DNA of 64,000 bases from Isurus oxyrinchus (lineage: Eukaryota), in assembly GCA_026770705.1 (NCBI GenBank), contig JANJGN010000301.1, positions 124,001 through 188,000 on the forward strand, in the 5' to 3' direction. The notes below the pieces were generated by a model. The model was not told the DNA's origin, did no database searches, and was given only the letters and a program-made list of their open reading frames with translations. Every line of letters begins with the position of its first letter. Position 1 is the stretch's first letter. A program made the position numbers and the translations under genes. Positions 461 through 63,479 of the stretch are shown here, piece by piece.

Positions 461-488
461 AGTTGTTTTACAAGATTCTAACTCTGTG
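461..488 (-). other. Atypical RSS, 12-bp spacer
   Basis: CACAGAG + ttagaatcttgt + AAAACAACT. Confidence 0.55.
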
Positions 489-781: not shown

Positions 782-1551
782 CTTTAAGGTAGAGGAACGA
801 AATATCAAGCGGTTAAACTGTGTTGATCAAAATTTGTTTGTGCTGTGTGAGCCCCGTCCCGCTGAACTGCTGATCCAAACAATGCCAAACAGAGAGCAGC
901 GGCATCAAACTGCTCAGTAACAGGGGAGGCAAGGCGGGTCAGAGCGACGGCAGCAAACGGAATGTGTGGGCGGCGCTAGAGCAGTAAATGTTGTCACACA
1001 TCGGACCCATTTGTAAGGAGCTGAATTCAATAATAATGTCTCCTTCGAAAGTGATATATCTCTGCCTCTCGATAATAACTGCTGTTCTTTCAGATTTATT
1101 CCAAATTGGAGGCGAGCAGGGTGAACACGTGTGTCAGCATTAGTAAATAATTCAATAATAAATTGAGTTTTCATTGGCTAAACCGTTTAAAACTGGGACA
1201 GAGCCTATGGACGGCTGGGTTAGCATAGTTCTGAGTAAATGTTCAACGAAGTATCAAAGGTTTGAAACCTTTAAACCAAAGTCCGATGAAGGAGATGTCT
1301 GAAAATATGGATAACGCGTGGAGACAGGGCGGGAGAAGGATCAAATCGGCAGGAAAGGCATCCAAAGAGAAAGAAGTGACGTAAGGCACCACAAATTGGT
1401 CCGTAATGTTAATGTTATTACATGTGTAATTTGAAATCGCAAATTAATATTACTGTTGAAATTGTCATTTTTTATTCTTGTAGAAGGCTGTGTTTTTTTG
1501 CAACTTTTCTCACTGTGGAGGCGGGATTATTGCTCCTGTTTTTCGGTTTGA

Positions 1552-1570
1552 GAGCGCCCTCTGCTGACCA
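1552..1570 (-). promoter_or_regulatory. CTCF motif adjacent to RSS
   Basis: TGGTCAGCAGAGGGCGCTC, 21 bp past the nonamer. Confidence 0.75.
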
Positions 1571-1591
1571 CTGACTGGAACTCTCAGTGTG

Positions 1592-1631
1592 GGTTTTTGT
1601 ACGGTATCCGCTATATCTCTGCAGCAGTGTG
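1592..1631 (-). other. RSS, 24-bp spacer
   Basis: CACACTG (1631-1625), 24 nt, ACAAAAACC (1600-1592). Confidence 0.9.
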
Positions 1632-1935
1632 GGGTCCATCGCACAGAAATATACCGCGCTGTCAGAGATCAGGATGTTACTGATCATGAGTTCGGTAATC
1701 TTTACAGTTTCATTAAACATTGCTGAAAACCGATCACTGATGTCCTTATTTCTGAATGGTATCCCTCCCAGAATATAAAGCATGTACTGTGGAGGCTGCT
1801 CGGGGCGCTGACTGTACCAGTACACATAACGGTTAGAAGTGCTTGTTTTCAATGTGCAAGCTACTGTAATATTACTTTTCTCGTCAAACGTTATTGCAGC
1901 AACCGGCAGTTCCACAATGTCTTGGTGGCTCCAGT
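1632..1935 (-). CDS. TRAV/DV: TCR alpha/delta V exon (family C), intact frame, leader not found
   Basis: Acceptor tgttag|. Reads DWSHQDIVELP...VACTL...VYWYSQRPEQPPQYML...DSAVYFCAMDP. Confidence 0.85.
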
Positions 1936-3183: not shown

Positions 3184-3202
3184 CCACCAGCAGAGGGCGC
3201 CA
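3184..3202 (+). promoter_or_regulatory. CTCF motif in V promoter (E-box GTCACGTG at 3226-3233)
   Basis: CCACCAGCAGAGGGCGCCA. Decayed in the pseudogene paralogue at about 43156. Confidence 0.75.
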
Positions 3203-3270: not shown

Positions 3271-3362
3271 TGAGATCACAACGGGCCTGGCCCCCTGCAG
3301 TGTGTGGGTGGAACAATGAGATCACAACGGGCCTGGCCCCCTGCAGTGTGTGGGTGGAACAA
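3271..3362 (+). repeat. Perfect 46-bp tandem duplication in V promoter/5'UTR
   Basis: tgagatcacaacgggcctggccccctgcagtgtgtgggtggaacaa x2. Confidence 0.95.
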
Positions 3363-3448
3363 TGAGCGGAACAAAGCCGGTGTTCCCTCTCTCCTCTTCA
3401 ATCTCTGGCTCATTCCATTCACATTCTCTGAAAGAGATTCGGACAGAC

Positions 3449-3968
3449 ATGTTTCTGATTATACTGGCGGCTGTCTGGGGCAGTAAGTACTGGATTATGT
3501 TAATCAAAACACATTAGCAGATTGAGGCAAAGGGTTTGCACTAGGAATTAATAGGATTAACGATCAGATGTCTTCATTTTATGAACAGCTTTGTTCATGG
3601 GAATTTGCGCAGTTATTTAGATGTTTAGATGGATCCTCTTTAACCGTATACTCTTCTGTTTCTCTATTTTCACAGGCGGACTGTGTGCCGATCCAGTAAC
3701 TCAGACCCCAGTGATGCTAACCGTGTCAGAAGGGGGTTCGGTGCAGTTAGATTGCGAATATACAGACCAGGCTATCGACGTTATGCAATGGTATCGGCAT
3801 AAATCGGCACAGCCTCCAAGCTGGATAATTACCAAAGTAGTAGGACTGAGAAAAGATGAAATCTCAGGACGATATCTGGCGGCTGCTGACAAGTCTAAAC
3901 AGTCCGGTTATCTCAATATAAGCGGCCTGAGTGTGGAAGACGAGGCCTCCTATTACTGTGCAGTGAGG
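3449..3968 (+). CDS. TRAV/DV: Functional-looking TCR alpha/delta V gene (family F): leader 3449-3482, V exon 3676-3968
   Basis: Leader MFLIILAAVWG|gtaagt. Exon cacag|SGLCADPVTQ...LDC...WYRHK...YYCAVR. RSS follows. Confidence 0.92.
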
Positions 3969-4006
3969 CACAGCCTCGCGTAAAGCCAGGAGCCCGTACG
4001 AAAACC
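3969..4006 (+). other. RSS, 22-bp spacer
   Basis: CACAGCC, 22 nt, ACGAAAACC. Confidence 0.85.
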
Positions 4007-7198: not shown

Positions 7199-7277
7199 GA
7201 CCGCCCTCTGCTGAGCGCTGACTGGAACTCCCAGTGGGATTTTTGTACGGGATCCGCTATATCTCTGCAGCAGTGTG
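7199..7277 (-). other. 24-spacer RSS (7277-7238) plus CTCF motif (7217-7199)
   Basis: CACACTG, 24 nt, ACAAAAATC; then CGCTCAGCAGAGGGCGGTC. Confidence 0.8.
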
Positions 7278-7713
7278 GGGTTCATGGCACAGAAATACAC
7301 GGCGCTGTCGGAGAGAACAGACCCGGCGATATTCAAATGAACCGTTTTGTTTTCTTTGTGCAAAACACCGGAGAACCTGTCTGGGAAATCTGGAGACTTA
7401 TCTGCAGTCCCTGAGCTGTTTATCTTCATTAAATATATCGGAGCTTCCCCGGAGTATTGAGTGTACCAGAACAGAGTTGTTGAGAACAGCTGTCGAGTAA
7501 TTACAGTCCAGTTTTATGCTCTGTCCTTCCAGAACCGTTAATTCAGGGGGAGCCTGGGACACTGAATCTTTGCCATTTGTTCCTATAAGAAAATACATCA
7601 TGTATCAAATATCTGGAATTGAAGATAGCAGATCGAACAGACATTGACCATTTAAACATTGACTCACGGGGCAGCAAGACTATTATTATACTGAAGGAAC
7701 ACAGGGACTACAT
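7278..7713 (-). pseudogene. Family D V pseudogene: leader 7713-7668, exon 7582-7278
   Basis: Leader begins ATG TAG. KDSVSQAPPEL...LDC, then a frameshift near 7475, then ...DSAVYFCAMNP. Confidence 0.9.
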
Positions 7714-10820: not shown

Positions 10821-10899
10821 CACACTGCTGCAGAGAGATAGCGGATGCCAGACAAAAACCCCACTGGGCGTTCCTGTTAATCCCCAGCAGAGGGCGCTC
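10821..10899 (+). other. 24-spacer RSS (10821-10860) plus CTCF motif (10881-10899)
   Basis: CACACTG, 24 nt, ACAAAAACC; then TCCCCAGCAGAGGGCGCTC. Confidence 0.85.
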
Positions 10900-11844
10900 T
10901 CACAAAGATTAACAGACACAACAATCCCGCCTCCACAGCGAGAGTCACAGCGACCTTCCAAAAAAAATCATAACAAATAACAAAACTCAACATTAAGAGG
11001 TGAAAAACACTTGTCAAATTGTATTAATTAATTTCAAGTCGAAATTGTACGATAACCGACTGTCATAAAGCTATTTGATCACTTTAATTTCCTTTTTGCC
11101 TTTTAATGCATTTTCAGTGCCTGTCTGTAATAGTGAGTTCCCCTTTCCCCAGCTCCCCTGTCAGGTTCCTGGAGCCTTTGGTCGCGGCCTGTTCACAGGA
11201 TTTATTTGAACAGAGTGTGTTGCTGGGCCAGAGACAGTTTGTACACAATGAGCGGAGTTCACCAGATCTTTAACGCAAAACTCAGGTAAAGAGTCCCCAT
11301 CGAGTTTGAGAATGTTTCCTTAATGCTGAGATGTTTTCTGTCACCATTATTAATCCCGAGTTTACTGGTGATAATTAACAGACCAGGGTTTCACTCCCCC
11401 TACTCCCGTCTCTAAAAGTGCAGCCATTCCTCCAACAGGCCATTGACTGTAGTCCAGTTGAATGCCAGAAAGCTCACCACCAACGGATCTCACAAAACCA
11501 GAGAGGGACAAGGATGTCAGGTGGGAACATTCCTAGACATGACAGCAAATGATTGAGCCTGGGGATTAGAACTGATACCTTCAAACCTGACTCTGTGATG
11601 GCCTTTTGGTGGGATCGGATTCTGCAGTTTGTTTTCTTGGCCGCTCCTGGAAACATTTGGTGACAGTTTGATCCAAGGTGAATGGGTTTTCCTCTCGATG
11701 TGTGTTTGAGGGGCTGACAGCGCCTCTGTAGATTGGCGCTGCATCTTCCCGAGATTCGATACAAATTCCATCACACAGGAGCTCCTATCCACAGTCCAAA
11801 GGCCGTTTTTTTTTACTGGGGTCAGACCGCTTCCCAGCATTGTG

Positions 11845-13752: not shown

Positions 13753-14533
13753 GGGAATCATGGCACAGCAACACACTGGCATCGGAGATCAAGGCTTTAC
13801 TAATCATTAACTCGGTGATCTTAGTAGTTTTACCAAACCTAGGTGAAAATCGGGCTGCAAAGTAGAATTTCCAGTTTTCTATCCATCCATGGAGAGGGTG
13901 GACAGCGGAGGATGCCTGGAGTGTTGACTACTCCACAGTACATAGGGCGTAAAATTGCTTGGTTTGAAGGTGAAGTTCAGGGTGATATTTCTTCTCTCAT
14001 CTGTTGTCATTTCAGCAGCCGACTATTCTACTGTGTGTTGATGGCTCAATTCTGATATAAATGCTGGGAATAGTCACCATCTCATCATCAGCAACATCAT
14101 TACCGGTGCAACATTTTACTCATTTACATGATGTGGGCTTTGCTGGCCGGGCCAGCATTTATTGCCCATCGTTAATTGCCATTGAGAAGGTGGTGGCGAG
14201 TTGCCTTCTTGAACCGCTTCAGTGCATGTCGTGCATGTAAATAAACACAGGGAATCGCCGGATTTAAAATGAAGTTGGAATTAGCTCCCATGTATCTACT
14301 CGTCTGCATTACAATATATTACATAGTAATAATATGAACAGGAATAATACAACACAATCATGCAACAACATCCTTCAATAATTTGAGAATCCGATGATTT
14401 TTCCAGGTAGTGCCCATTTACCCCAGGTCGCCACCAGATGGAGCTCCTACGATGTGTTTGTTTGTTTACTGCCGCAGGTAGGGGCACAATAACATGACGG
14501 TTATGATCTTGATTTAGTAATCAAGGAGGCCAT
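13753..14533 (-). pseudogene. Family C V pseudogene (exon about 14051-13753, leader relic about 14533-14470), RSS truncated by LINE
   Basis: Colinear with 1632-1935 (KITELMIS..., CAM). Heptamer TACACTG is followed directly by CR1. Confidence 0.7.
14428..14446 (+). promoter_or_regulatory. CTCF motif
   Basis: TCGCCACCAGATGGAGCTC. Confidence 0.65.
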
Positions 14534-15944: not shown

Positions 15945-16935
15945 AGCAAAAGCAGCACATCAGTGAGAGCATTGCATTAGCGAAAACAGCGCATCATCTA
16001 GAGCATCACATTGGCGAGAGCAGCGCTTCAGCGGGTGCATCACATCAGTGAGAGCAGTGCTTCAGTGACAGCAATGCATCAGCAACAGCAGTGCATCAGC
16101 GAGAACAGCACATCAGTGAGAGCAGCACTTCAGCGACAGCAGCGCATCAGCGAGAACAGTGCTTCAGCGACAGCAGCACATCAGCGAGAACAGCGCTTCA
16201 GCGACAACAGTGCATCAGCGAGAACGGTGCTTCAGTGAGAGCAGCGCTTCAGCGACAGCAATGCATCAGCGAGAGCAGTGCTTCAGTGAGAGCAGCGCAT
16301 CAGCGACAGCTGCGCAGCACCGAGAACAGCGCTTCAGCGACAGCAATGCATCAGCGAGAGCAGCGCTTCAGCGAGAGCAGCACATCAGCGAGAACTGCGC
16401 TTCAGCAAGAGCATCGCATCAGCGAGAGCAGCGCATCAGTGACAGCAGCACATCAGGAAGAGCAGCGCATCAGCGAGAGCAGCGCATCAGCGACAGCAGC
16501 ACATCAGCAAGAGCAGCGCATCAGCGAGAGCAGCGCATCAGTGACAGCAGCACATCAGCGACAGCAGCGCATCAGCAAGAGCAGCGCATCAGCGACAGCA
16601 GCGCATCAGCGAGAACAGTGCTTCAGCAAGAGCATTGCATCAGCGAAAGCAGCGCATCAGCGAAAGCAGCGTATCAGCAAGAGCAGTGCATCAGCGACAG
16701 CAGCGCATCAGCGACAGCAGCGCATCAGCAAGTGCAGCGCATCAGCGACAGCAGCGCATCAGCAAGAGCAGCGCATCAGCGAGAACAGCGCTTCAGCAAG
16801 AGCAGCGCATCAGCGAGAGCAGCGCATCAGCAAAAGCAGCGCTTCAGCAAGAGCAGTGCATCTGTGACAGCAGCGCATCAGCGAAAGCAGCGCATCAGCG
16901 AGAGCAGCGCATCAGCGTCAGCAGCGCATCAGCGT
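15945..16935. repeat. 17-bp minisatellite, about 58 copies
   Basis: Consensus AGCAGCGCATCAGCGA(G/C). Confidence 0.95.
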
Positions 16936-18119
16936 TGGATTGAACACTTGCCCTCCATGATGATATGAAAGATATTTACCGCAAAGGTAATATTCTTGAT
17001 TGTAAATCCCAATAATTCCCAATTAAATCAAAACTCCAGTAATATTCCTGATCCACCGAGTGCGGAAACCAGGAAACACAATGAATGGAAATGCAGCTTC
17101 ATCCTTTTGATCTTTAGCGAGGACTGATAACCTCCACACCCAACGCTGTTCTCCTCAATACGGTTGACTCATTTGTGAACTACAGGTCCACAGACACCCT
17201 CCATTCAGCAGGGAAAGGTTTAACAGGGTCGGCTGAAGCCTGTTACCGTTTTGCTGCTATCATTTTCTCATATTGCTAACCTTCAGCTCTTGACTGTTGG
17301 GCAGGTCTGTGGCGGAAACAGTGTTTAGTTCAGTCAGGCGCAGATCAATACACCATACAGCAGAGGAGGAGTCCATTCGGCCCATTGTGCTCGTGCCAGC
17401 TCTTCGCATGACCAATACAATTAATCCCACATCTCCACTCTTTCCCCAAACCCAAGACAATTCTTCAATAACATGTTTGTAACATTATTCAATAAATTCA
17501 TTTTAAAAAAGAAGTAACGAAAAATATTTGGGAATAGAGATTATCATTTCAAATGAAAAGTCTGTTTCATTTTAAAACTTATGATGAACGTTTAAGATAT
17601 TAAGAATGTAAAGATGTTGTAAATATAGTTCACCGAGTAGATTTTATCTGATCTCACCTGCTGCTTACCTCTCCCATTCTGTTCAACCCTGTCAGTCAAT
17701 CCACATTTCATTCATGTAATAGGTGGAATCGGTCCATTTGACCGTGTCGCTTTATTCAAAGCTTTCAGAGCACCCTGGTCCTCTATAACCGCTTTTCTAT
17801 TAGCTGTGGATTGCCCTAATCATCAGACAGCAGTTCTTTTAACGTGAGCTTCCGACACTAATAACAGCAAAATATGATCCCTTTCCATTCATTCCACACA
17901 CCTCGCAGCCTCAAACAGTTTAAGGGATAACATTGTGTTTAATTCCTGTCCTACTCTCTGTTCCATTCACTATTGCCCGATCTGATGTCACGAATTGGAG
18001 AGTAAAGGAACTCTCAGCTGATTGGATGAAAAACAGAATAAAGAAACTGATTGGATGCCACGTGCTGATTCTGTGAGGAATGAATCAATAGGCAGAGACG
18101 CTGGATGTTGCGCAATATT

Positions 18120-20059: not shown

Positions 20060-23000
20060 AGCTCTTGAACTTTCCCAGCAGGTACGAGGTAATTGCTCCC
20101 TATGTGGATGAGAAACAGGTTTGTAGGGAGGATGAGCCAGCTGACCACGGCACCGTGGCACAGGAGTCAATTCAAGAGGGGGGAGCAAAAAGACAAGTGG
20201 TATTTGTAAGGGATTCTATCATTAGGGGAATTGATACCATCCTTTGTAAGCAGGATCGAGAATCCTGCATGGTATGTTCCAGCCAGGGTGAGGGACATCT
20301 CTGACCAGCTTGAAAGGATATTGCAGAGTAAGGGGGAGGATCCATTTGTTGTGGTCCACGTCGGGACAAATAACATAGGTAAGAGTAGGAAAGAGGACCT
20401 GTTTGGGGATTATCAGGAACTAGGAACAAAATTAAAGAACAGGTCCACAACAGTTATGATCTCCGGATAACTACACCAGCCACGTGCAAATTGGCATAGG
20501 GACGCGAGAATAAGGGAAGTAAACACGTGGCTAAGGGAGTGGTGTGGGAAAGAGGGGTTCTATTTCGTGGGGCACTGGCATCAATATTGGAACAGGAGGG
20601 ATCTGTACCGTTGGGAAGGTTTCCAGCTGAACCGATCTGGGACCAATGTTCAAGCGAAAAGGGTAAATTGGGTTGTCAACAGGACTTTAAACTAGAAAGT
20701 CGAGGGGAAGGGAAGAGTAAAACTCCAAGAAGTATGACTAATGGGAAACAAAGCAGCAGGTTAGCGTGTCGGGGGTGGATTCAACTTCATGGAAAATTAT
20801 GAAAAAACTGAAAAGAAAGGAGAGCCCAGGAGAGGCCATTAAATTCTGCACACCACAAAATAGGACAGAATATTTGGAAAGGGCTAGGAATCTAACTTCA
20901 AGCACATCAGATAAAGGGGCGACAATGAAAAAGGGGACGGGAAATACAGGACTGAAGGTGTTGTATCTGTATGCACGCAGATACGAAATGAGGTAAATGA
21001 GCTTGTGGCACAAATGGAAATTGGCAGGTATGATGTGGTGGGCATCACGGAGACTTGGCTGCAAGGGAATCAGGACTGGGAGATAAATATCCAAGGATAT
21101 ACATCCTATCGAAAAGATAGGTAGGTTAGCAGAGGTGGTGGGGTTGCTTTGTTAGTAAGAAATGAATTTAAATCGATAGTAAGAAACAACGTAGGGTCAG
21201 ATGATGCAGAATATGTGTGGGTAGAATTGAGGAATTGCAATGGTAAAAAAGAAACATAATGGGAGTTATGTACAGGCCTCCGAACAGTAGTCAGAATGTG
21301 GAGCACAAGATACACCAGGAGATAGAAAAGGCATGTAAGAAAGGCAAGGTTACAGTGCCCATGGGGTATTTCAATATCCAGGTAGACTGGGAAAATCAGG
21401 TTGGTAGTGGATACCAAGAAAAGGAACTTGTGGACTGTCTACGAGATGGCTGTTTTGAGCAGTTTGTGGTGGAGGCCACTAGGGAACAGGCAATTCTACA
21501 TTTAGTGATGTGTAATGAGGCAGATTTGATAAGGGAGCTTAAGGTGAAGGAACCCTTAGGAGGAAGTGACCATAATATGATAGAATTTACCCTGCAATTT
21601 GAGAGGAAAAAGCTGGAATCAGATGTAACAGTATTACAGTTGAGTAAAGGCAACTACAGCGGCATGAGGGAGGAGCTGGCCAGAATTGACCAGGAAAGAC
21701 AGTGGAACAGCAATGGCAGGAGATTATGTGAGTAATTTTGGAGACACAGCAAAAATTCATCCCTAGGAAGAAGAAGTATGCCAAAGGGAGGACGAGGCAA
21801 CCATGGCTGAAAAGGGAAGTCAGAGACAGCATAGAAGCTAAAGAGAAAGGACACAACACAGCGAAGTGCACTGGGAAGCCAGGGGATTGGAAGCCTACAA
21901 AGACCAACAGACAGCTAAAAATGACATAAGGAGGGAGAAGAATAAATATGAGGGTAAACTAGCCAGTAATATAAAATAAGATTGCAAGAGGATTTCTTTT
22001 AGATTTATGAAAGGTAAGAGAGAGGCAAAAGTGGAGATTGGGCCACTGGAAAACGACGTTGGAGAAGTAGTAGTGGGGAACAATGAAATAGCGGAGGAAC
22101 TGAATAGATACTTTGCATCATTCTTCACGGTGTAACATTCCCAAAGTTCAAGAGAGTCGGGAGGGGGGCAGAGTTGAGTATGGTGGCCATTACTAAGGAG
22201 AAGGTGCCAGGAAAGCTGAAAAGTCTGAATGTGGATAAATCAACTCCACCAGATGGATTACGCCCCAAAGTTCTGATGGAGATAGCTGAAGAGATAGTGG
22301 AAGCGTTAGTGCTGATCTTTCAGGAATCACTCGACTCAGGGAGGGTCCCAAGGACTGCAAAATTACTAATGTAACCCCCCTGTTTAAGAAGGGAGTAAGG
22401 CAAAAAAGGGGAAATTACAGGCCGATTAGCCTGACCTCGGTCGTTGATAAGATTTTAGAGTCCATTATTAAGGATGAGATTTCAGAATACTTGGCAGTGC
22501 ATGGTAAAATAGGGCAAAGTCAGCATGGTTTCATCAAAGGGAAGTCATGCCAGACAAATCTGTTAGAAATCTTTGAGGAGGTAACAAGTAGGTTAGACAA
22601 AGGAGAGCCAGTGGATGTTATCTACTTGGACTTCCAGAAGGCCTTTCACAAGGTGCCGCACAGGAGGCTGCTCAGTAACATAAGAGCCCATGGTGTTCGA
22701 GGCAAGGTAATAGCATGGATAGAACATTGACTGTCTGGCAGGAGACAGAGAGTGGTGATAAGGGGGTCCTTCTCAGGATGTCGGCCGGTGACTAGTGGAG
22801 TTCAGCAGAGGTCAGTGTTGGGACCTCTTTTTACTTTATACATTCATGATCTAGATGCAGAAACTGAGGGCATTCTGGCTAAGTTTGTAGATGACACAAA
22901 GCTAGTTGGAGGGACAGTTAGCATTGAGGAGGCGGGGAGGCTGCAGAAGGGTTTGGACAGGTTAACAGAATGGGCAAAGAAGTGGCAGATGGAATACAAC

Positions 23001-23801
23001 GTGAGAAAGTGTGGTGTCATGAACTTTGGTAGGAAGAATAGAGGCTTGGACAATTTTCTAACTGGGGAGAGAATTCAGAAATCTGGAGTGCAAATGGACT
23101 TGGGAGTCCTAGTTCAAGATGCTCTTAAAGTCAACTTGCAGGTTAAGTCGGTAGTTAGGAAGGCAAATCAATATTGGCATTTATTTCGAGAGGGCTAAAA
23201 TATTAAAGCAGTGATGTGCTGCTGAGGCTTTATAAGGCTTTGGTCAGACCACATTTAGCAATTTTGGTCCTCATATCTCATGAAGGATGTGCTGGCCCTG
23301 GAGAGGGTGCAGAGGAGGTTCACGAGAATGATCCCAGGAATAAAAACATATGAAGAACGTTTGAGGACTCTGGGTCTATACTCAATGGAGTTTAGAAGGA
23401 TGAGGGGGGATCTGACTGAAACTTACAGAATACTGAAATGCCTGGATAGAGTGGACGTCGGGAAGATATTTCCATTAGTAGGAGAGACTAGGACCCGAGG
23501 GCACAGCCTCAGAGTAAAGGGGTGACCTTTTAGAACAGAGATGAGGAGAAACTTCTTTAGCCAGAGAGTGGTGAATCTATGGAATTCATTGCCACAGTAG
23601 GCTGTGGAGGTCAGGTCATTGAGTGTATTTAAGACCGAGATAGATAGGTTCTTGATTGGTAAGGGGATCAAAGGTTACAGGGAGAAGGCGGGCGAATGGG
23701 GTTGAGAAACTTATCAGTCACGATTGGATGGCGGGGCAGACTCTATGGACCGAATGGTCTCATGTCTGCTCCTTTGTCTTGCGATCATACGGTCTTATGG
23801 T
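20060..23801 (+). mobile_element. Near full-length degenerate CR1 LINE (ORF1 SGNH esterase; ORF2 endonuclease + RT)
   Basis: DSIIRG, VHVGTNN, GVMYRPPN, GSDHNMI, YLDFQKAF, KFVDDTK; ggtcttat tail; many stops and frameshifts. Confidence 0.95.
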
Positions 23802-23987
23802 ATTGCCGCAAGTAAAGAAACGAAATGTAGCTCTTGCGGAGGTGTACTTAGGGAAAGCAGATTCCATCCAAAATGCCAAGAGAAAACATAGAAAGAAGAA
23901 AAAACTGTTGTAGGAAAATTGTTAAATGCAATCTTGAATGCGGAAGGCTAACAAGTGCTGGAAAGCTGCACCTTATAGTTCCAGTCA

Positions 23988-24006
23988 CCGCCACCAGAGG
24001 GCAGTG
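23988..24006 (+). promoter_or_regulatory. CTCF motif
   Basis: CCGCCACCAGAGGGCAGTG with upstream tagttcc module. Confidence 0.75.
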
Positions 24007-31287: not shown

Positions 31288-31639
31288 GCCTTTGCATTGT
31301 TAGTGGGAGCTCCTGTCTGTTGGGGTTTGTGTAGAACCGCGGATGGATGAAGCTATAATGCGCAGCGGCGCTGCCAGCCGCTCCGAAAGACACTGCGAGA
31401 GAAAACCAAATTAACCTCGGTTCAAACTCAACTGTTCTCAGGAGCGGCCGGGAAATTCAAACAAACTGCAGATTCCGATCGGCCAGATAGACATGGAGGG
31501 GAACCATGTGTGAAGACACCCTGACCAATCCTCACTAGTTGTTCAACATCATCAAGGTTAATGGAGAACAGATACATTCTAGAATGAGGGAGACATCTGC
31601 AAACAGAATAGACACTGAGGGCGCTCAATGCTTGGTTTA

Positions 31640-32351: not shown

Positions 32352-32370
32352 CGAGCCCTCTAGTGGGCAC
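32352..32370 (-). promoter_or_regulatory. CTCF motif
   Basis: GTGCCCACTAGAGGGCTCG. Confidence 0.6.
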
Positions 32371-34249
32371 TGACTGGGGCTCTCGGTGTCTGGTTTTCTA
32401 CAGGCTCCTGGAAGACCTATTCACTATTTTTTGTTATTCATTCATGGGATGTGGGCTTCTTTGGCTGGGCCAGCATGTATTGTCCATGCCTAATTGCCCC
32501 TTTAGAGCTTGGTGCTGGGCTATATTCTTGAGCCGCTGTGGTCCATGTGGTGCAGGTTCAGCCACAGAGCTGTTAGTTAGGGAGTTCCAGGATTTTGACC
32601 CAGCGACAGAGATGGAACTGCATGCAGTGACTACTACATGTCTCACAATTGCATTGAAGTACATTAAAGTGCAACAGTTATGCAGATACCTGAAATATAA
32701 TTGCCTTGTCTGACTGTGAGGAAAAACTAGGTTGGACTGCCTGTAAAGACCAGGTTGGAATGTATGCAATGTTAATTGATTGTATTGAAGCACCTCATGA
32801 TCTATGTGGAAAACCGAAATATGATTGCACTTTTTGTGATGGCCATTTTGAAACGCTTTGTAATGTTCTTTCAGATATTTCATGAATAAAGTATATTTTT
32901 TCCGAAAATGAATTGAATTACAGGAGTAGGACTCACTAATGGCAATGGTATAATTACATGATTGCTTGAGTAAATTAGTTCATTTATTACCATCACCTTT
33001 GTTCGGTGTGAAGAAGACAATGATCGATACAATAGAAAAAAGCTTTAAAATCGTAGAAAATAATATCTGAAATGAGTAGCGGCAAGGATTGAACTCTGCC
33101 CTCAGTGGGAGAGGGCACTGTCCCTGATACTGTATCTATTGTTTCAGCTGGGAATCTGAACTGTTCACTGCACTTTGCCATGTACTACATGCGACTGCTA
33201 AATTGCCAACATAGCCGATTCGGGGAAGTTGCCGCCTAAGCGGCATTGAAGAGTAACTCTCGAACGCTGAATGGAAGGAGAAATTGCTGGCGTGAAATTT
33301 TTATTTCCTCCAACAGGTGGCAGACGAAGCCCAGAAATCGCCTAGCTCCTTTCCTGGAGCCTTAGAATTATCCATCATCCAATCTGTGCTTACAAATCCC
33401 ATTTCGCTCCTGGAATCCACTCATACTCAATGGTTTAAATTCACCCGTCTGCAGGGAAACCATAGCCGCTGTCCCACTCGCCGGTACCTCGGAAAAGATG
33501 TGGAGAGTTCAGTCACTTTTATGATCTCACATCCACGCTGTCAATGCTTCCACAATCCGCTGAAAGGGGGATTAATGGGAGAGTAATTAATACTGCGGAA
33601 CCTGCACAACCTCCACCACACCTCTGCCTCAATCCCCTCCGCGCCTACCATCCCTTCTGAAGCAAATGTGGCGCTTTCTCATTTTGTGAGCTCTTAAATG
33701 GAGAGGAATTGCAATGTGAACCCATCTGATCTGCTCCTGCTCCATCTCAGAAGATGGATCTCGCTTCTTCAGATTCCTGGGTTTCAAGGCCAACGTCACA
33801 GGGTGAAAGGTCAGCCTCTGCCGCAATGGCCAAATGAATGCCTCGTCAGAGACAGGAGGCCCTCTTCGAACTCAGTTGAGGCAGAACGGACTCCGGCTCC
33901 GTGAGGATCCCAGAACAAGCATCTGACTCACCCACATCACAGTTCTGTGCAATACCGCAAAAAGCATGACAGCATTGAGCCCTGAAATAAGACAAAATGC
34001 CGCGAGAGTGTGTGTCAGCGCCAATTAGACTTCAGCATGGCAGTGTGACCTGAATCTCCGGGAAAATGTTAGTCTTTTGCATTCAGACCTGGCAGAAAAT
34101 GCCGTCATCGATTGCAATCGGGATTACCCAAACTGATTGAAACTCAATGCAGTGTAAACACCATCGGCGCCGAGGCTAAACACTGGCGCAGCCAAATACA
34201 AAACCCTGGCCTGGAATTCATCCTATCTGCGACCGCAACACTGACGGGG

Positions 34250-35497: not shown

Positions 35498-35536
35498 CAC
35501 ACTGAGACAAAATGCGGCAGTCACTGTACAAAAACC
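35498..35536 (+). other. 23-RSS
   Basis: CACACTG, 23 nt, ACAAAAACC. Confidence 0.95.
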
Positions 35537-35706
35537 TCGCTCCTGGTTACAGGTCCGGAAGAGCGGCAGCAATCTCTCTGATAGCACAAGGCGGGCCAGC
35601 CGGCTCGGAGCATCAATGGCTAAAGGGAGAAACAGGCAAGGCTGCCGCGGGTTGTCCTGTAAATCCGTTTAGAGAGGATCTTTCAACAGAGATACTGATG
35701 GTCACA

Positions 35707-37660
35707 ACATAAGACCATAAGACCATAGGTGCAGAAATTAGGCCATTCGGCCCATCGAGTCTGCACCGCCATTCAATCATGGCGGATAACTTTCTCCACC
35801 CCATTTTCCCGCCTTCTCCCCGTAACCTTTGATCCCCTGACCAACCAAGAACCTATCTATCTCGGTCTTAAATACACTCAAAGGCCTGGCCTCCACAGCC
35901 GTCTGTGGCAATGAACTCCATAGATTCACCATTCTCTGGCTAAAGAAGTTTCTCCTCAACTCTGTTCTAAAAGGTCTTCCCTTTACTCTGAGTCTGTGCC
36001 CTCGGGTCCTAGACTCTGCTACCAATGGAAACATCTTCCCAATGTCCAATCTATCTAGGTCTTTCAGTATTCTGTAAGTTTCACTCAGAGCCCCGTCATC
36101 CTTCTAAACTCCATCGAATAAAGACACAGAGTCCTCAAACTTTCCTCAAATGTTAAGCCTTCCATTCCTGGGATCATTGTCATGAACATCCTCTGGACCC
36201 TCTCCAGGGCCAGAACATCCTTCCTGAGATACGGGGCCCAAAATTGCTCACAATATCCTAAATGTGGTCTGACCAGAGTCTTATAAAGCCTCAGCAGCAC
36301 ATCCCTGCTTTTATATTCTAGTCTTCTGGAAATAAATGCCAACATTGCATTTGCCTTCCTAACTACCCACTCAACCTGAAAATTAACCTTAAGGGAATCC
36401 TGGACTCGAACTCCCAAGTCCCTTTGCACTCAAGAATTCTGAATTCTCTCCCCATCTAGAAAATGGTCTATGCCTCTATTCTTCCTACCAAAGTGCATAA
36501 CCTCACATTTCCCCACGTTGTATTCCATCTGCCACTTCTTTGCCCATTCTCCTAACCTTTCTAAATACTTCCACAGACTCCCTGCCTCCTCAGTACTACC
36601 TGTCTCTCCACCTATCTTTGCATCATCTGCAAACTTAGTCAGGATGCCTTCAGTTCCTTCATCTAGATCATTAATGTATAAAGTGAAAACGTCTGGTTCC
36701 AACACTGACCCCTGCGGAACTCCACTAGACACCGGCCGCCATACTGAGAAGGATCCCCTTATCCCCACTCTCTGCCTCCTGCCAGACAGCCAATCTTCTA
36801 TCCATGTTAGTACCTTGCATCTAACACCATGGGTTCTTATCCTACTGAGCAGCCTCCTGTGTGGCGCCTTATCAAAGGCTTTCTGGAAGTCCAAGTAGAT
36901 AACATCCATTGGCTCTCCTTTGTCTAACCTACTCGTTATCTCCTCAAATAATTCTAACAGATTTGTCAGGCATGACCTCCCCTTGATGAAACAATGCTGA
37001 CTTTGCCCTATTTTACCATGCACTTCCAAGTATTCTGAAATCTCATCCTTAATAATGGACTCTAAAATCTTAACAACGACCGAGGTCAGGCTAAATGGCC
37101 TGTAATTTCCCTTCTTTTTCCTCACTCCCTTCTTAAACAGGGGGGTCACCTTAGCGATATTCCAGGTCTCTGGGACCCTCCCTGACTCCAGTGATTCCTG
37201 AAAGATCACCACTAAAGCTTCAACTATCTCTTCAGATATCTCCTTCAGATCTCTGGGGTGTAATCCATCTGGTAAAGGCGATTTATCTACCTTCAGACCT
37301 TTCAGTTTTCCTAGCACCTTCTCCTTGGTAATGGTTAGCATACTCACCTCTGCCCACCTGGCTCTCTTGAACTTTGGGGATATTACTCGTGTCTTCCACT
37401 GTGAAGACTAACGCAAAGCACCTATTCAGTTCATCTGCTATTTCTTTGGTCCCCACTCCTTATTCTCCAGCGTCATATTCCCGCGGCCCAATGACCTATT
37501 TGCCTCTCTATTCCCCTTTATATATCTAAAAAGAAACTCTTGCAATCTTCTTTTATCTTACTGGCTAGTTTACCCTCATATTTAATCTTCTCCCTCCTTA
37601 TTCCTTTTTTAGTTGTCCTCTGTTGGTGTTTGTAGGCTTCCCAATCCCTTGGTTTCCTAC
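35707..37660 (-). mobile_element. 5'-truncated CR1 LINE (RT domain), same family as 20060-23801
   Basis: ORF 36430-37347 with YLDFQKAFD, GVPQGSVL, KFADD; (ataagacc)n tail. Confidence 0.95.
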
Positions 37661-41040: not shown

Positions 41041-41510
41041 ATGCATTTCGCGGTACAAATGAATCTACTCCCCATCATTCTGGTGTTACTACCTTGTAAT
41101 TGTAAGTCTACAGTAACCTGTAGAGAGTGTCTATTTATACACACGTTGCTTCAATATTTCGTTGTCTGAATATTTTTACAGGTCGATGTTGCTCGGAACA
41201 GGTGTCCCAGTTTCCCACTGCGAAAACAGTCCAGAGCGGGGATTCGGTGCTGATAAACTGCACTGATGACATGTCCAGCTTCAACGGAATGCACTGGTAC
41301 AAACAGAAATCCGGTCAGGGTCTGGGAAGGATAACAGGCAGATTCTTGGCTGGCAAAGTGATGAAGGGCCGATTCGATTTGGAACTTTCCCCTGAGGACA
41401 AACGGGGCCAATTGGTTATTGAGAAGACGGAGAGCGCGGATAGCGCTGTGTATTACTATCCCATAAAACCCCAAGCTGAGAGGAAAGGCTGCAGTCACTG
41501 TACAAAAACC
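41041..41510 (+). pseudogene. Family B V (open frame; second Cys>Tyr; heptamer CAAGCTG)
   Basis: Leader 41041-41095 MHFAVQMNLLPIILVLLP. Exon 41182-41471 ends AVYYYPIK. 23-nt spacer, ACAAAAACC. Confidence 0.88.
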
Positions 41511-43373
41511 TCCCTCCTGTTTACAGCCCCGGGACTGCTGCAGCGACCTCTCTAATAGCGCAAGACGGATATAAAGGCATGACGGGTCAGAACGAGCGCA
41601 GCATACGGGGGCTGTGAGCGGGGTGCCGCTAGCTTTATAAAACCCTTCAGGTAGCGACTTTGATCAGAGGTTGTGACAGTCACAGCATAAAGTATGCGAC
41701 ATGAGAAACAGTCATTCATTGAGCGCGGTCTTCTTTGTGAGTAAATCTTAAGCGTTGATTAATTGTAGGGTTATAATCCGCTGAGTCGATTCGGACATTT
41801 TATTGAATATGTGTGCAAGTGATTCTGCCGTGTGACGGCTCATCGGAAATTTAAACAGTGATAATTCTTGAGTCTGTCAATCTTCAGTGCGGGAAATTAT
41901 CTGCCAGGTCATACAAGCATGCGGACAAGGGGCAGGAGTAGGGAATTCAGCCCCTCGAGCCTGCTCCGCAATTTAATAAATTCTTGGCTGATCCGATTAT
42001 AATCTGAAATAGGCTTCCCAACTACCTCCGATAACCTTTCACCCCCTCCCTTACCAAGAATCTATCCACAACTGCCATAAAAATATACAAAGACTCTGCC
42101 TCCACCGCCTTTTCAGCAAAGAGAGTTCCAAAAACTCATGACCCTCTGAGTGAAAAAAGAACTCGCATCATCTCTGCTTCAAATCAGGTCCCTGGTTCAC
42201 GGTACTGCTGATCTATCCAAATGCAAGAACAGACAAAGGGGAAGCAATACCTCCAAGAGCAAAATCGGGTCAGAGGAGAGGAACAAACGGAAGCTGTGGC
42301 CGGAGGTGCAGCAGATTGAAACCTGCTAAAAGTGCGCGGCGGTGATAAGCTGCAGCCGGAAATGATGGTGCGGAAATAACGACGGTTGAAACTCCAGAAG
42401 CCTGCGAGCATCCTGCATTTGTTCACTTATCAAGTGAATGAGAATAAATCATGCGGGAGCGGCAGTAAGCGAGCAGACTCACAGAAACTTACGAAACTGA
42501 ATGAGGACTCCGCTTACTGTATCTGTGTCTATTTGAAAGACCCACCCCAATCGCCTTTCACACCTCACATTTTCCACCTTGTCTTTTTTTTTCAACTTAT
42601 AACAATTCCGTATTGAAATTTACGATTGAATCTTCTACCCCATCATTTCAAACATGGTGTTTCAGATGGTAACACATACAATGTAATAAATAAAACAGAT
42701 TTTCCCCTCTCTATTGTTTTGGTGGAATCGAAATGATTTGGTGATTGAATCAGCTCATAATGGAAGCAATTGCGACCTAACCTGTCATAATGACATACTT
42801 CAAATCAGTTGAGTGTCTTTTCTACCACCTTTGTTACGAGGGCAAGAATCCAAGTTTCCCTTGCCTGTTCGAGTAAACCTTCCTCATCTCTGGTGCCATT
42901 CTGGTGTACAGCGTCCGCACTTTCTCCAAAATCTTCAGATTACTTCTACTCGTCGCGCCCGGGTTTTGGGCGGAGAAATCCAGCGACGATTTCTACAGAT
43001 TTAACATTGCGCTCCGACATAAACATCAGCAGCAACAAAGGCTGCGTCTAAACAGCTCCAATTTAGGCTTCTGGGGAACATTCGTGTTTTGATGTGCGTT
43101 TCAATAAACCCTGAATCCTCTCAACGGCCGCATCGAACACGAATTTAACCGAATTCACCAGCGGAGGACGCCAAGTTCAAGCATAGGCTTCATTAAGTCA
43201 CGTGGTGGAGACGCCAAAGCCAATAAGGATAGTTTTCTGAGTAAGGTAACAATGGGCCTGGCCCCCTGCAGTATGTGGATGGAACGATGAGCTGAACAGA
43301 GCCCGGGTTTCCTCTCTCCTCTTTAACCTCTGGCACATTCCAATTGCATTCGCTGAGACTGAGTCAGTCAGAC

Positions 43374-45928: not shown

Positions 45929-45947
45929 GTTCCACTAGATGGCGCTC
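45929..45947 (+). promoter_or_regulatory. CTCF motif
   Basis: GTTCCACTAGATGGCGCTC. Confidence 0.75.
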
Positions 45948-52065: not shown

Positions 52066-52104
52066 CACACTGAGACAAAACGCGGCAGTCGCTGTACAAA
52101 AACC
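52066..52104 (+). other. 23-RSS
   Basis: CACACTG, 23 nt, ACAAAAACC. Confidence 0.95.
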
Positions 52105-52407
52105 TCGCTCCTGGTTACAGTTCCGGAAGAGCGGCAGCAAACTCTCTGATAACATAAGGCGGGCCAGGCGGCTCAGAGCATGAGCGTCTAACGGGAGAGA
52201 CGGGCAGGGCTGCCGCGGGATGTCTAGTAAATCCCATTAGAGAGGGGCTTTGATCAGAGATACTGACGGTCACAGCAGATAGTGTCGGACTGAGGAGACA
52301 GTTGGTCAGTGCGGTCTTTGCTTCACTGTCTGATTGGGTCCCAGGGAACCGAGAGAGATCTTGAGTCTTTATCTTATGCTGTTGTGTGATTATTCTTAAA
52401 GAAAATT

Positions 52408-53105
52408 AGAACCATAGAACCATGGAAAACTTACAGCAAAGAAGGAGGCCATTCGGCCCATCTTGTCCATGCCTGCCCGAAGACACCAAGGTGCCCGTTC
52501 TCATCCCACATTCCTGCACCCGGCCCATAGCCCTGCAGCTTACAGCACTTTAGGTGCCGATCCAGGTACTTTATAAAAGGGTTTAAAGTTTCTGTCTGTA
52601 CCACCAAATTGGGCTGCGAATTCCAGACACCCACTACGCTCTGCGTAAACAGTTCCACTTCATGTCCCCCCTACACCTTCTGCCACTTATCTTGAATCTA
52701 TGTTCCCAGGTTCTGGAATTCCCCATCAAGGAAAAAACTTTATCCTGTCCACTTTATCTATTCCTCTCATAATTTTGTACACCTCAATCAAGTCACCTCT
52801 CAGCCTTCTTTGATCTAAGGAAAATAACCCCAACCTATCCAATCTCTCCTCGCAGCTACCCTTTTCTAACTCTGGCAACATTCCTGTGAACCTCCTCTGC
52901 ACTCTCTCCAAAGCTCTTACGCCCTTCTTGTAATGTGGTGCCCAGCACTGCAAACAATACTCCAGTTGTGGCCACACCAGGGATTTATGCAATTCAAACA
53001 ACATATCCTTACTTTTATATTCTATACCTCTGCCAATGGAGGAAAGCGCTCTATATGTCTTCATTACAATCCTGTCCACTTGAACTGCTGCCTTCAGTAC
53101 GCCAA
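52408..53105 (-). mobile_element. CR1 3' fragment
   Basis: RDLGV...LERVQRRFT...RLRGDLIEVYKIM. Confidence 0.88.
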
Positions 53106-53885
53106 GATCTCTCACTTCATTAATATCGTTAAACTGTAAAATCCGTGCTTACACTGAAGTGCCCACAATGTGAGCAAATTTACTCCCGTCCCAAATTGTA
53201 ACGAAATAGTTATCTAAAAGAACACACCTGTGGTTGTCCTGCAGGTGACATTTCCCACTCCTCTCTTTTGGAAAGCTGCAGAAAGGCAACCAAATTCTAC
53301 GCACAAACAGAAAATGCTGGAAATAGAACCAGAAATAGCGTGAAGATTCCAGTTTGTGACATTTCACCAGAAATCTGCAACTTCTCAAACTGAGCTCAGA
53401 TGAAATGTCACGTACATGAAACCATATTTGTGATTCGCACTGCACCGACGCTTCCTGACCTGCCATGTATGGCCATAATTATCTGTCATTGTACCTCAAA
53501 ATTCTTTGGATGGGAGTATAAAAGTTGATAGTTAGACTGGCTGCTGGTTACAGAGAAATATGAAGAGTGAGTGAATGACTATTCTCATCTCTAAGTAGCC
53601 GTGGGTCTAGTGTCACCTGCAGAATATCCATTTATGAACCAGGTGGGTTTTCATAACAATTGACAATGGTTTCCTCCTGCAGATAATTCAAGCAAGTTAT
53701 TGCATACAAATTACATTAATGGCCATGGTGGGATTCGAACCCTGGACATTATACCAGGTTGTTAAATCGCCAGTGTAGTTACAACACCACTATGCCAGCA
53801 CCTCAGTCTTCACCAATAAGGGTTCAGAAATGCGAAGTCGTGTATGTGACTCTGGCAGTGTCTAGCAGAGAGTAGATTACTCAAG

Positions 53886-54112
53886 GTGTGTGTGTGTGTG
53901 TGTTTGCGTGCGTCTGCATGTGTGCGTGTGTCTGTATGTGTGTGTGCGATTATGACAGTGCCCAGCAGAGNNNNNNNNNNNNNNNNNNNNNNNNNNNNNN
54001 NNNNNNNNNNNNNNNNNNNNNNNNNNNNNNNNNNNNNNNNNNNNNNNNNNNNNNNNNNNNNNNNNNNNNNNNNNNNNNNNNNNNNNNNNNNNNNNNNNNN
54101 NNNNNNNNNNNN
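53886..54112. other. (GT)n microsatellite followed by assembly gap (N run 53971-54112)
   Basis: Direct reading. Confidence 0.98.
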
Positions 54113-63460: not shown

Positions 63461-63479
63461 CCGCCACCAGAGGGCAGGC
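63461..63479 (+). promoter_or_regulatory. CTCF motif
   Basis: CCGCCACCAGAGGGCAGGC with upstream tgtagttac module. Confidence 0.75.

What the first reader, a model, noticed from the sequence alone, without database searches (positions are those of the whole stretch)
1552..1660. RSS-coupled CTCF sites: a mammalian-Igh-style RAG-scanning element in a probable shark TCR locus
Seen: three V segments (RSS at 1592-1631 -, 7238-7277 -, 10821-10860 +) each carry a near-consensus CTCF core (CAGCAGAGGGCG) 20-21 bp past the nonamer. In each case it is co-oriented with the V and preceded by a GTTCC upstream module. The motif survives even where the V coding sequence has decayed. Established: mouse D-proximal VH genes have CTCF elements just downstream of the RSS that promote their use during cohesin loop extrusion/RAG scanning, whereas mammalian Tcra/d CTCF sites are mostly promoter-side. 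Inference: the same RSS-CTCF device is used here, either as an ancient or a convergent arrangement.
Basis: partly seen in the sequence, partly recalled or inferred. Interest (0 to 1): 0.8.

Follow-up and report, generated by a model that had tools for sequence, protein, structure and literature searches.

The report
CTCF-type site behind shark V signals
Three receptor V gene segments in this cartilaginous-fish window carry, just behind their recombination signal, a well-kept match to the binding site of the genome-folding protein CTCF, the layout known from mouse and human antibody heavy-chain genes, but whether CTCF binds it or steers gene choice is untested.

Summary
CAGCAGAGGGCG lies 24-25 nt (the 14-nt CTCF consensus 23-24 nt) after the nonamer of three V segments, on the V strand, with GTTCC 10 nt upstream. 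The three are not independent. They share one inherited module of about 165 nt: FR3 end, 24-nt-spacer RSS, linker, CTCF site. V1's coding exon is unrelated to V2 and V3, so the module crosses V families.

Constraint is likely:
- The 12-mer is invariant while both flanks vary.
- A fourth identical copy with unrelated flanks sits 249 nt upstream of another V's leader.
- Contigs of this species and a close relative show other module classes with unalignable linkers, yet an upstream motif and core in the same register within 1 nt.

Limits: only 3 of 13 RSSs have it, two of the three Vs are pseudogenes, and two lie on the strand opposite to most Vs.

This is the mouse/human IgH "RSS-associated CTCF site" geometry in TCR-type Vs of a cartilaginous fish. 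My searches found no paper on it. CTCF binding and any RAG-scanning role are inferred. This scan noted the same module before on other pieces of this genome.

The parts
1508..1672 (-). Shared module on V1: FR3 end, RSS, linker, CTCF-type site and about 45 nt beyond
   Evidence: Alignment A1 and block identities. Summed contig depth rises about 10-fold between 1504 and 1672 in all 4 runs, and loose ends cluster at 1508-1511 and 1673.
1632..1935 (-). V1 V exon, open frame ending ...DSAVYFCAMD; leader not resolved
   Evidence: 59% identical to Chiloscyllium punctatum protein P0001.
1592..1631 (-). V1 RSS: heptamer CACACTG, 24-nt spacer, nonamer ACAAAAACC
1577..1582 (-). V1 upstream-motif-like AGTTCC, 10 nt before the 12-mer
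   Evidence: Compared with the tested site TGCAGTTCC + 8 nt + CCAGCAGAGGGCA in PMC11194110.
1554..1567 (-). V1 CTCF-type core TCAGCAGAGGGCGC (1 mismatch to CCASYAGRKGGCRS)
7238..7277 (-). V2 RSS (24-nt spacer); the V2 exon at 7278-7585 has a frameshift
7201..7229 (-). V2 two-part site: AGTTCC (7224-7229) and core TCAGCAGAGGGCGG (7201-7214)
10821..10860 (+). V3 RSS (24-nt spacer); the V3 exon upstream has stops in all frames
10870..10897 (+). V3 site: GTTCC (10870-10874) and core CCAGCAGAGGGCGC (10884-10897, exact consensus)
3187..3200 (+). Promoter-side CTCF-type core CCAGCAGAGGGCGC. Its flanks are unrelated to the module. It lies 249 nt upstream of the leader ATG (3450) of the V at 3621-3983.
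32353..32400 (-). Relic of the module. A nonamer-like ...GAAAACC is followed by a 25-nt linker (AGCCCCAGTCAGTGC), core CCACTAGAGGGCTC, then GCTCACACC. No V is left, and repeat-like sequence lies upstream.
23977..24004 (+). Solitary two-part site AGTTCCAGTCACCGCCACCAGAGGGCAG, about 770 nt upstream of the V ORF that starts at 24774. No RSS beside it.
63464..63477 (+). CTCF consensus CCACCAGAGGGCAG, 342 nt after the RSS of the pseudogene V at 62721-63121
45932..45945 (+). Intergenic exact CTCF consensus CCACTAGATGGCGC
14431..14444 (+). Intergenic CTCF consensus with 1 mismatch. Others of this kind are at 33310-33323(+) and 60015-60028(+).

Best explanation
The element is a two-part CTCF-binding site: an upstream motif (A/C)GTTCC plus the core CAGCAGAGGGCG. 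It is built into a module of about 165 nt that also holds the last 40 or so nt of FR3 and a 24-nt-spacer RSS.

**Shown**
- The module is inherited as a unit and is shared by V segments of at least two unrelated V families.
- It is present in many copies in this genome and in a close relative.
- The CTCF-type motifs are kept better than the DNA between and around them.

**Inferred**
- Shark CTCF binds the site with its cohesin-blocking side facing away from the V.
- Cohesin reeling chromatin past a recombination centre would stall with the V's RSS held beside it. That would raise the V's chance of cleavage and joining, as shown for D-proximal mouse VH segments.
- This can hold only for module-bearing Vs that lie in the deletional orientation. 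For inverted or dead Vs the site would act only as a general loop anchor or insulator.
For: 1. **Strong consensus matches.** The cores match CCASYAGRKGGCRS with 0-1 mismatch. The 11-nt stretch CAGCAGAGGGC is identical to CTCF sites used in single-molecule binding work, and those sites have TGCAGTTCC upstream (PMC11194110 methods passage).

2. **Two-part composite.** AGTNCC, then 8-10 nt, then the core occurs 3 times in the window against 0.005 expected in 200 shuffles.

3. **Local conservation peak.** Among V1, V2 and V3 the 12-mer is identical in all 12 columns. Pairwise identities by block are:
- linker 0.67-0.83;
- next 25 nt 0.64-0.68;
- further downstream 0.41-0.57;
- V2-V3 exon 0.65.

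4. **Independent fourth copy.** The same 14-mer with unrelated flanks lies upstream of another V.

5. **Footprint across module classes.** Contigs laid numbered 54, 36, 70 and 49 from 4 runs of two organisms. In some, homology to V1 breaks in the linker, yet the unaligned part carries (reverse complement):
- GCAGTACC or GTAGTTCC, then 10 nt, then CATCAGGGGGCG;
- CACTAGAGGGCGC;
- GAGTTCC, then 10 nt, then CACTAGA.
All are in the same register within 1 nt. Differences fall in the spacers and at degenerate consensus positions.

6. **One other source.** ORF P0003 (JGI contig of unknown species) reads ...YFCAMEPTLLQRQANPVQKPQAGVPVGDQQRARPH. It keeps GVPV (GTTCC) and QQRA (the core frame) although the spacer peptide differs at 6 of 9 residues from V2.

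7. **CTCF specificity is shared across vertebrates.** The lamprey protein binds the same two-part motif (PMC5504073). Skate TAD boundaries show the oriented mammalian motif (PMC10115646).

8. **Mouse precedent for function.** Use of VH81X and VHQ52.2.4 depends on their flanking CTCF sites, and repairing the site of a pseudogene VH made it the most used (review PMC7930373, passage).
Against: - No binding or usage data exist for this species in what I could reach.
- The three window copies descend from one module, so the in-window coupling is one event plus maintenance.
- The RSS itself is at least as well kept, so part of the conservation could be gene conversion of the whole module.
- Two of the three Vs are pseudogenes. 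In mouse, non-functional 7183 and Q52 members typically lack the site.
- V1 and V2 are inverted relative to most Vs.
- Only 3 of 13 RSSs have the site.
- One class of contigs (X19, place 1574, agreement 0.57) shows no core after GTTCC.
- P0002 (ENA, unknown species) reads PRRVRAHT where the module frame gives PSRGRSHT. By the fewest base changes, that implies a core with 2 consensus mismatches (inference).
- One search showed only 41 of 170 'other letter' rows. The absence of rows in 1553-1567 is therefore weak evidence.
Confidence: 0.55

Rival explanations
1. Passenger. The CTCF-type motif is real sequence but rides along in a module that is kept or homogenised for the sake of the RSS, by duplication and gene conversion between V 3' ends. 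If CTCF binds, it serves general locus folding or insulation between V units and does not affect which V is chosen.
For: - The whole module from FR3 end to core is shared between unrelated V families. V1-V2 identities are exon 0.44, FR3 end 0.85, spacer 0.96 and core 0.93.
- Perfect motifs sit behind two dead Vs.
- The sites point in opposite directions.
- The window holds 8 further CTCF consensus matches that are not beside an RSS, so CTCF sites are a general feature of the array.
- Depth peaks on the RSS and falls off smoothly on both sides, with no separate peak on the core.
Against: - The linker between nonamer and core, and the 25 nt after the core, are clearly less well kept than the core.
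- Diverged module classes keep the upstream motif and core in register while the spacers between them are unalignable. Conversion alone does not predict that.
Confidence: 0.27
2. Neighbour's element. The site serves the next gene along, as a promoter-side or boundary CTCF site of the mammalian Tcra type. Its closeness to the RSS would be incidental.
For: - The identical core at 3187-3200 is promoter-side, 249 nt before a leader ATG.
- The site at 23977-24004 lies about 770 nt before a V ORF.
- V1's site lies about 820 nt upstream of the V exon at 468-734 on the same strand.
Against: - The distance to the nonamer is fixed at 23-24 nt in three copies, and within 1 nt in other genomic classes. 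The distance to the next gene is not fixed.
- V2 and V3 have no V within 2 kb downstream on the same strand.
- The upstream regions of the two same-family Vs at 468-734 and 3621-3983 share no homology beyond the exon and about 40 nt of intron.
Confidence: 0.08
3. Another factor. GTTCC read on the other strand is GGAAC (ETS-type) and CAGCAG is E-box-like. The block would then be a composite site for lymphoid transcription factors that open the RSS, not a CTCF site.
For:
- GGAA and CAGC half-sites are present.
Against: - The full 14-nt CTCF consensus is matched, not only CAGCAG.
- Variant copies change CAGCAG to CACTAG or CATCAG, which destroys the E-box but stays within the CTCF consensus.
- The GTTCC-to-core distance is within 1 nt of that in tested two-part CTCF sites.
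Confidence: 0.05
4. Chance resemblance.
For: None beyond the shortness of the motif.
Against: - 5 exact consensus matches against 0.05 expected.
- 11 matches at up to 1 mismatch against 0.75 expected.
- No shuffle reached either count.
Confidence: 0.01

Closest known systems
RSS-associated CTCF-binding sites of mouse and human IgH VH segments (Ciccone et al. 2019, PMC6746451; functional work summarised in PMC7930373)
   Same: - A CTCF core lies on the V strand at a short fixed distance after the 23-type RSS nonamer.
- It is kept better than the surrounding DNA.
- It is family-linked: 11 of 16 mouse VH families have it.
- The core variant is CCAGCAG-type (mouse sub-consensus GACCAGCAGGGGGC).
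   Different: - These are TCR-type Vs of a cartilaginous fish, not VH.
- Counted to the equivalent 14-mer start, the distance is 21-22 nt, against 17-19 in mouse.
- The RSS spacer is 24 nt.
- The site has a clear upstream motif.
- The module crosses unrelated V families.
- Copies sit behind pseudogenes and in both orientations, whereas more than 98% of mouse sites share one orientation.
- Binding and function are shown in mouse and untested here.
Promoter-side CTCF sites of mammalian Tcra/Tcrd V segments (PMC5859386, Table 2)
   Same: - The locus type is TCR alpha/delta-like.
- The window also holds promoter-side sites (3187-3200, 23977-24004).
- Most sites share the Vs' orientation: 8 of 11 on the plus strand. 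In mouse, 129 of 144 point to J-C.
   Different: The three sites of the finding are behind the RSS, not before the promoter.
Two-part CTCF sites (core plus upstream motif bound by zinc fingers 9-11)
   Same: (A/C)GTTCC lies upstream of the core. Such sites are reported to be about 15% of all CTCF sites and to be stronger insulators (PMC11417384; PMC11194110).
   Different: GTTCC-to-CCAS spacing is 9 nt in the three RSS-linked copies, against 8 nt in the tested sites and in the solitary site at 23977. That two spacing classes exist in mammals is my recollection and was not checked in a call.

Membership tests
RSS-associated CTCF-binding element (IgH VH type) | Match to the CTCF core consensus | tested here: met
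   0-1 mismatch to CCASYAGRKGGCRS at all three sites. The consensus is as printed in PMC6746451.
RSS-associated CTCF-binding element (IgH VH type) | Fixed short distance downstream of the V RSS nonamer | tested here: met
   24, 23 and 23 nt to the 14-mer. Other genomic classes are in register within 1 nt. Mouse is 17-19 bp and human 19 or 48 bp, so the value differs by 3-4 nt.
RSS-associated CTCF-binding element (IgH VH type) | Motif kept better than flanking DNA | tested here: met
   The 12-mer is invariant in 12 of 12 columns, against flank identities of 0.64-0.83. The footprint recurs across module classes. Only 3 full copies lie in the window.
RSS-associated CTCF-binding element (IgH VH type) | All sites oriented toward the D-J-C end | tested here: inconclusive
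   The sites are co-oriented with their own V, but two are on the minus strand and one on the plus strand. No J or C lies in the window, and a look-up of earlier notes did not place one.
RSS-associated CTCF-binding element (IgH VH type) | Bound by CTCF in vitro and in vivo | not testable with these tools
   No ChIP or ATAC data could be reached. No listed run holding the stretch is on record as RNA.
RSS-associated CTCF-binding element (IgH VH type) | Raises use of the adjacent V in V(D)J recombination | not testable with these tools
   No repertoire data were available. Two of the three Vs are pseudogenes.
Two-part CTCF site | Upstream motif (TGCAGTNCC-like) about 8 nt before the core | tested here: met
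   GAGTTCC, GAGTTCC and GCGTTCC lie 9 nt before the 14-mer. The composite count is 3 against 0.005 expected.
Promoter-side Tcra-type CTCF site | Lies upstream of a V leader or promoter | tested here: not met
   The three sites follow an RSS. The feature is met only by the separate sites at 3187-3200 and 23977-24004.
Transposon-borne CTCF site | Copies share transposon ends, not gene parts | tested here: not met
   The shared block begins inside FR3 coding sequence and contains the RSS. No transposon library was searched.

The most novel reading that the evidence does not exclude
The RSS-plus-CTCF-site module is ancestral to jawed-vertebrate antigen-receptor V genes of the VH/V-delta type. Cohesin- and CTCF-assisted presentation of V signals to RAG would then predate the split of cartilaginous and bony fishes. 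Mouse and human proximal VH sites would be its descendants. In sharks the module would be spread between V families by gene conversion, as a portable 'use-me' tag.
Probability: 0.15. Interest if true: 0.85.

Novelty: new member of a known kind. Interest (0 to 1): 0.58.

Why it matters
RSS-adjacent CTCF sites are the best-studied cis element by which loop extrusion chooses V segments. In the papers I read they are described for mammalian IgH only: human, mouse, chimpanzee and rabbit (PMC6746451).

Finding the same geometry in TCR-type V segments of a cartilaginous fish raises a testable question. Is CTCF/cohesin-guided RAG scanning as old as V(D)J recombination in jawed vertebrates, or did it arise twice? 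The sequence also shows signs of constraint and many genomic copies.

The material offers natural experiments for repertoire and chromatin studies:
- module-bearing and module-free Vs side by side;
- intact and dead Vs;
- both orientations;
- several core variants.

The sharing of one module between unrelated V families also bears on how RSSs and their flanks evolve in concert.

Tried and rejected
**Fetching orthologous DNA**
- A metagenome scan used an RSS-side pattern, chosen so as not to select for the CTCF motif. It gave 14 loci, L001-L014. All are chance matches with no V or RSS, and I did not use them further.

**Reading the module from read-through ORFs of other sources**
- P0003 supports conservation.
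- P0002 suggests a weakened core.
- P0001 (Chiloscyllium punctatum) keeps a CAGTTCC-compatible SVP, but its core cannot be decided from protein alone.
- I treat all three as weak evidence.
- The listing of cluster members gave no species for P0002 or P0003.

**Typing the Vs as TCR or Ig.** The PDB sequence search gave generic V-domain hits: scFv light and heavy chains, TCR alpha, V-delta-1.

**V1's site as a promoter element of the next V.** I aligned the upstream regions of the two same-family Vs. There is no homology beyond the exon and about 40 nt of intron.

**Direction of J-C.** A look-up of earlier notes gave nothing usable.

**Homology of the core to the mouse VH sub-consensus.** Rejected as evidence, because the same CCAGCAGAGGGC variant is a common strong CTCF site.

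**Not done**
- The third word-index protein search and the large HMMER search. The first two searches found only 2 proteins each, and the claim does not rest on absence of relatives.

**Supplements were closed**
- Tables S1-S3 of PMC6746451 list sites, including in TCR loci.
- Table S3 of PMC5859386 was also out of reach.
- These may show RSS-adjacent sites in mammalian TCR loci that I could not see.

**'Not in print'** rests, and on 0 occurrences of 'CTCF' in PMC12227049.

Full report
**What the window is.** The 64-kb window (44.6% G+C, one N gap at 53971-54112) is an array of about 16 immunoglobulin-superfamily V segments on both strands. I found 13 with a recognisable 22- to 24-nt-spacer RSS. 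Retroelement fragments lie between them. The V1 protein is 59% identical to a Chiloscyllium punctatum protein, and a V2 relative is from Callorhinchus milii, so a cartilaginous fish is likely. PDB sequence hits are generic V domains.

**The observation.**
- CAGCAGAGGGCG occurs exactly at 1555-1566(-), 7202-7213(-), 10885-10896(+), and also at 3188-3199(+). That is 4 matches against 0.17 expected.
- The first three follow the RSSs at 1592-1631(-), 7238-7277(-) and 10821-10860(+).
- The 14-nt consensus CCASYAGRKGGCRS, printed in PMC6746451, starts 24, 23 and 23 nt after the nonamer, on the V strand.
- GTTCC lies 10 nt before the 12-mer in all three.
- The V1 exon is open, V2 has a frameshift, and V3 has stops in every frame.
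That figure fits only a longer matrix.

**The three cases are one module.** In alignment A1, V1's exon is unrelated to V2 and V3 (0.44 and 0.35 identity in a gapped alignment), while V2 and V3 are 0.65 identical. From about 35-40 nt before the heptamer all three become alike.

| Block | V1-V2 | V1-V3 | V2-V3 |
|---|---|---|---|
| FR3 end | 0.85 | 0.69 | 0.80 |
| Heptamer | 7/7 | 7/7 | 7/7 |
| Spacer | 0.96 | 0.83 | 0.83 |
| Nonamer | 0.89 | 1.00 | 0.89 |
| Linker | 0.83 | 0.67 | 0.74 |
| Core 14-mer | 0.93 | 0.93 | 0.86 |
| Next 25 nt | 0.64 | 0.64 | 0.68 |
| Next 35 nt | 0.41 | 0.54 | 0.57 |

The 12-mer inside the core is 12 of 12 identical in all three. A module of about 165 nt is thus shared by two unrelated V families. 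This needs either exchange between V 3' ends or very strong constraint. Co-orientation of motif and V follows from this copying and is not separate evidence.

**Is the motif constrained beyond the module?** Four lines say yes.

1. There is a conservation peak on the core between two less conserved flanks. With about 0.55 of flank columns invariant, a run of 12 invariant columns somewhere in 61 columns has a probability of roughly 0.02. This is my own estimate from the counts.

2. The copy at 3187-3200 has the identical 14-mer CCAGCAGAGGGCGC but unrelated flanks. It lies 249 nt before the leader ATG of the V at 3621-3983.

3. I laid Logan contigs of four runs on 1400-1780 at 80% likeness. Two runs are of organism A, which holds 0.64-0.65 of the stretch's words. 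Two are of organism B, a relative holding 0.17-0.18.
   - 54, 36, 70 and 49 contigs were laid.
   - Summed depth rises about tenfold between 1504 and 1672 in all four runs, peaking on the RSS.
   - Loose ends cluster at 1508-1511 and at 1673. These mark the module's borders genome-wide.
   - None of the 41 shown 'other letter' rows falls in 1553-1567. However, 129 rows were not shown, so this is weak.
   - More telling are contigs whose likeness to V1 breaks in the linker. Their unaligned parts read (reverse complement): GCAGTACC-TTCATGTGCT-CATCAGGGGGCG (X1), GTAGTTCC-CTCCTGTGTT-CATCAGGGGGCG (X3), GGTTAGAGT-CACTAGAGGGCGC (X1, X3) and CACTGGGAGTTCC-ATTTGGTGTC-CACTAGA (X19).
   - The upstream motif and the core stay in the same register within 1 nt. 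The 9-10 nt between them is unrelated from class to class, and the core differs only at degenerate consensus positions.
   - The window's own relic at 32353-32400(-) is a further such class: AGCCCC, then AGTCAGTGC, then CCACTAGAGGGCTC, then GCTCACACC. It lies behind repeat-like sequence with no V left.

4. ORF P0003, from a JGI contig of unknown species, keeps GVPV..QQRA although the spacer peptide has changed.

**Evidence against.**
- One contig class (X19, place 1574, agreement 0.57) shows no core.
- P0002 implies a core with two mismatches if the fewest base changes are assumed.
- The P0001 core cannot be read from protein.

**The wider array.**
- The consensus is strongly enriched in the window as a whole: 5 exact matches against 0.05 expected, and 11 at up to 1 mismatch against 0.75 expected.
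- Eight of the 11 are on the plus strand. So are 9 of the 10 Vs beyond 12 kb.
- Of the 11 sites: three are RSS-linked, one is the relic, two are promoter-side (3187; 23977-24004, which also carries AGTTCCAGTCA), one lies 342 nt after an RSS (63464), and four are intergenic.
- Nine of 13 RSSs have no consensus match at up to 2 mismatches within 400 nt.
- RSS coupling is therefore a property of one module, not of the locus.

**Would CTCF bind?**
- The core equals tested CTCF sites over CAGCAGAGGGC, and those sites have TGCAGTTCC 8 nt before CCAG (PMC11194110, methods passage). The shark copies have GTTCC 9 nt before.
- The upstream motif is reported at about 15% of sites and strengthens binding and insulation (PMC11417384, passages).
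- Lamprey CTCF binds the same two-part motif (PMC5504073, abstract and passages).
- Skate TAD boundaries carry the mammalian motif with the expected orientation bias (PMC10115646, passages).
- Binding here is thus a well-founded inference, but it is not shown.

**How it most likely works.**
- In mouse IgH, RSS-associated sites lie 17-19 bp after the RSS, and in human 19 or 48 bp. They occur in 11 of 16 mouse VH families, and more than 98% share one orientation (PMC6746451, abstract and passages).
- Use of VH81X and VHQ52.2.4 depends on their sites, and repair of a dead site made a pseudogene VH the most used (PMC7930373, passage).
- The shark order V, then RSS, then upstream motif, then core is the same. 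By established knowledge of CTCF polarity (recalled, not from a call), it would block cohesin arriving from the side away from the V and so hold the RSS at the stalled loop base.
- That step is inferred. It can apply only to copies in the deletional orientation.
- V1 and V2 are inverted relative to V3 and to most Vs, and V2 and V3 are dead. For these copies an architectural or passenger role is more likely.

**Comparison and novelty.**
- Mammalian TCR alpha/delta sites are mostly before V promoters, and TCR beta has '2 near RSS' (PMC5859386, Table 2).
- PMC6746451 analysed human, mouse, chimpanzee and rabbit and has no occurrence of 'shark'.
- My searches for CTCF with shark, RSS, TCR and loop extrusion found nothing on this.
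- The 2025 paper on elasmobranch Ig/TCR linkage has no occurrence of 'CTCF' (PMC12227049).
- I file the element as a new member of the known kind 'RSS-associated CTCF site', in a new locus type and lineage. Its distinctive features are the module shared between V families and the explicit two-part motif.
- This scan has noted and followed up the same module on other pieces of this genome (s1-866039, s1-871674, s1-868614). Those follow-ups reached similar conclusions. I did not use them as evidence.

**Verdict.** It is best read as a constrained CTCF-type site in an RSS-linked module. A role in RAG scanning is plausible but untested, and it is contradicted as a universal role by orientation and pseudogene status. 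Interest 0.58.

Noticed in passing
window 461-488 (-): The V at 468-734 has heptamer CACAGAG, a 12-nt spacer and AAAACAACT. Its same-family neighbour at 3621-4006 has a 22-nt spacer. Noted before by the scan (s1-869631).
   Followed up: partly
window 1491-1517 (-): A 12-RSS-like CACAGTG, 11 nt, then AAAAAAACA lies about 35 nt after V1's CTCF-type core, inside the block AATCCCGCCTCCACAGTGAG. V3 shares that block but V2 does not.
   Followed up: no
window 3272-3365 (+): A direct tandem duplication of about 47 nt (GAGATCACAACGGGCCTGGCCCCCTGCAGTGTGTGGGTGGAACAATGA, twice) lies between the promoter-side CTCF-type site and the leader of the V at 3621-3983.
   Followed up: no
window 16091-16968 (+): Long ORFs in three frames over a tandem repeat that encodes ...SSASATAAHQREQRISE... 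units. Probably a satellite-like repeat, not a gene.
   Followed up: no
window 21259-23525 (+), 35777-37347 (-), 52726-53115 (-): Reverse-transcriptase-type ORF fragments of LINE-like elements lie between the V segments. One ends about 200 nt before the solitary two-part CTCF-type site at 23977.
   Followed up: no
window 35498-35620, 52066-52190, 57808-57930, 41470-41600 (+): A second V family (YYCAAE, YYCVIK) shares its own conserved post-RSS block, CTCGCTCCTGGTTACAG.TCCGGAAGAGCGGCAGCAA. It holds no CTCF consensus.
   Followed up: no
window 11700-11800 (-), 31290-31400 (+), 55140-55250 (+): A third V family (YYCALRL type) shares a post-RSS block about 100 nt after the nonamer, ending ...GCGCAGCGGCGCTGCCAGCCGCTC. 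Its meaning is unknown.
   Followed up: no
window 32440-32560 (-): Repeat-like sequence (...GGCAATTAGGCATGGACAATACATGCTGGCCCAGCCAAAGAAGCCCACATCCCATGAATGAATAA) abuts the relic module where a V and RSS would be expected.
   Followed up: no
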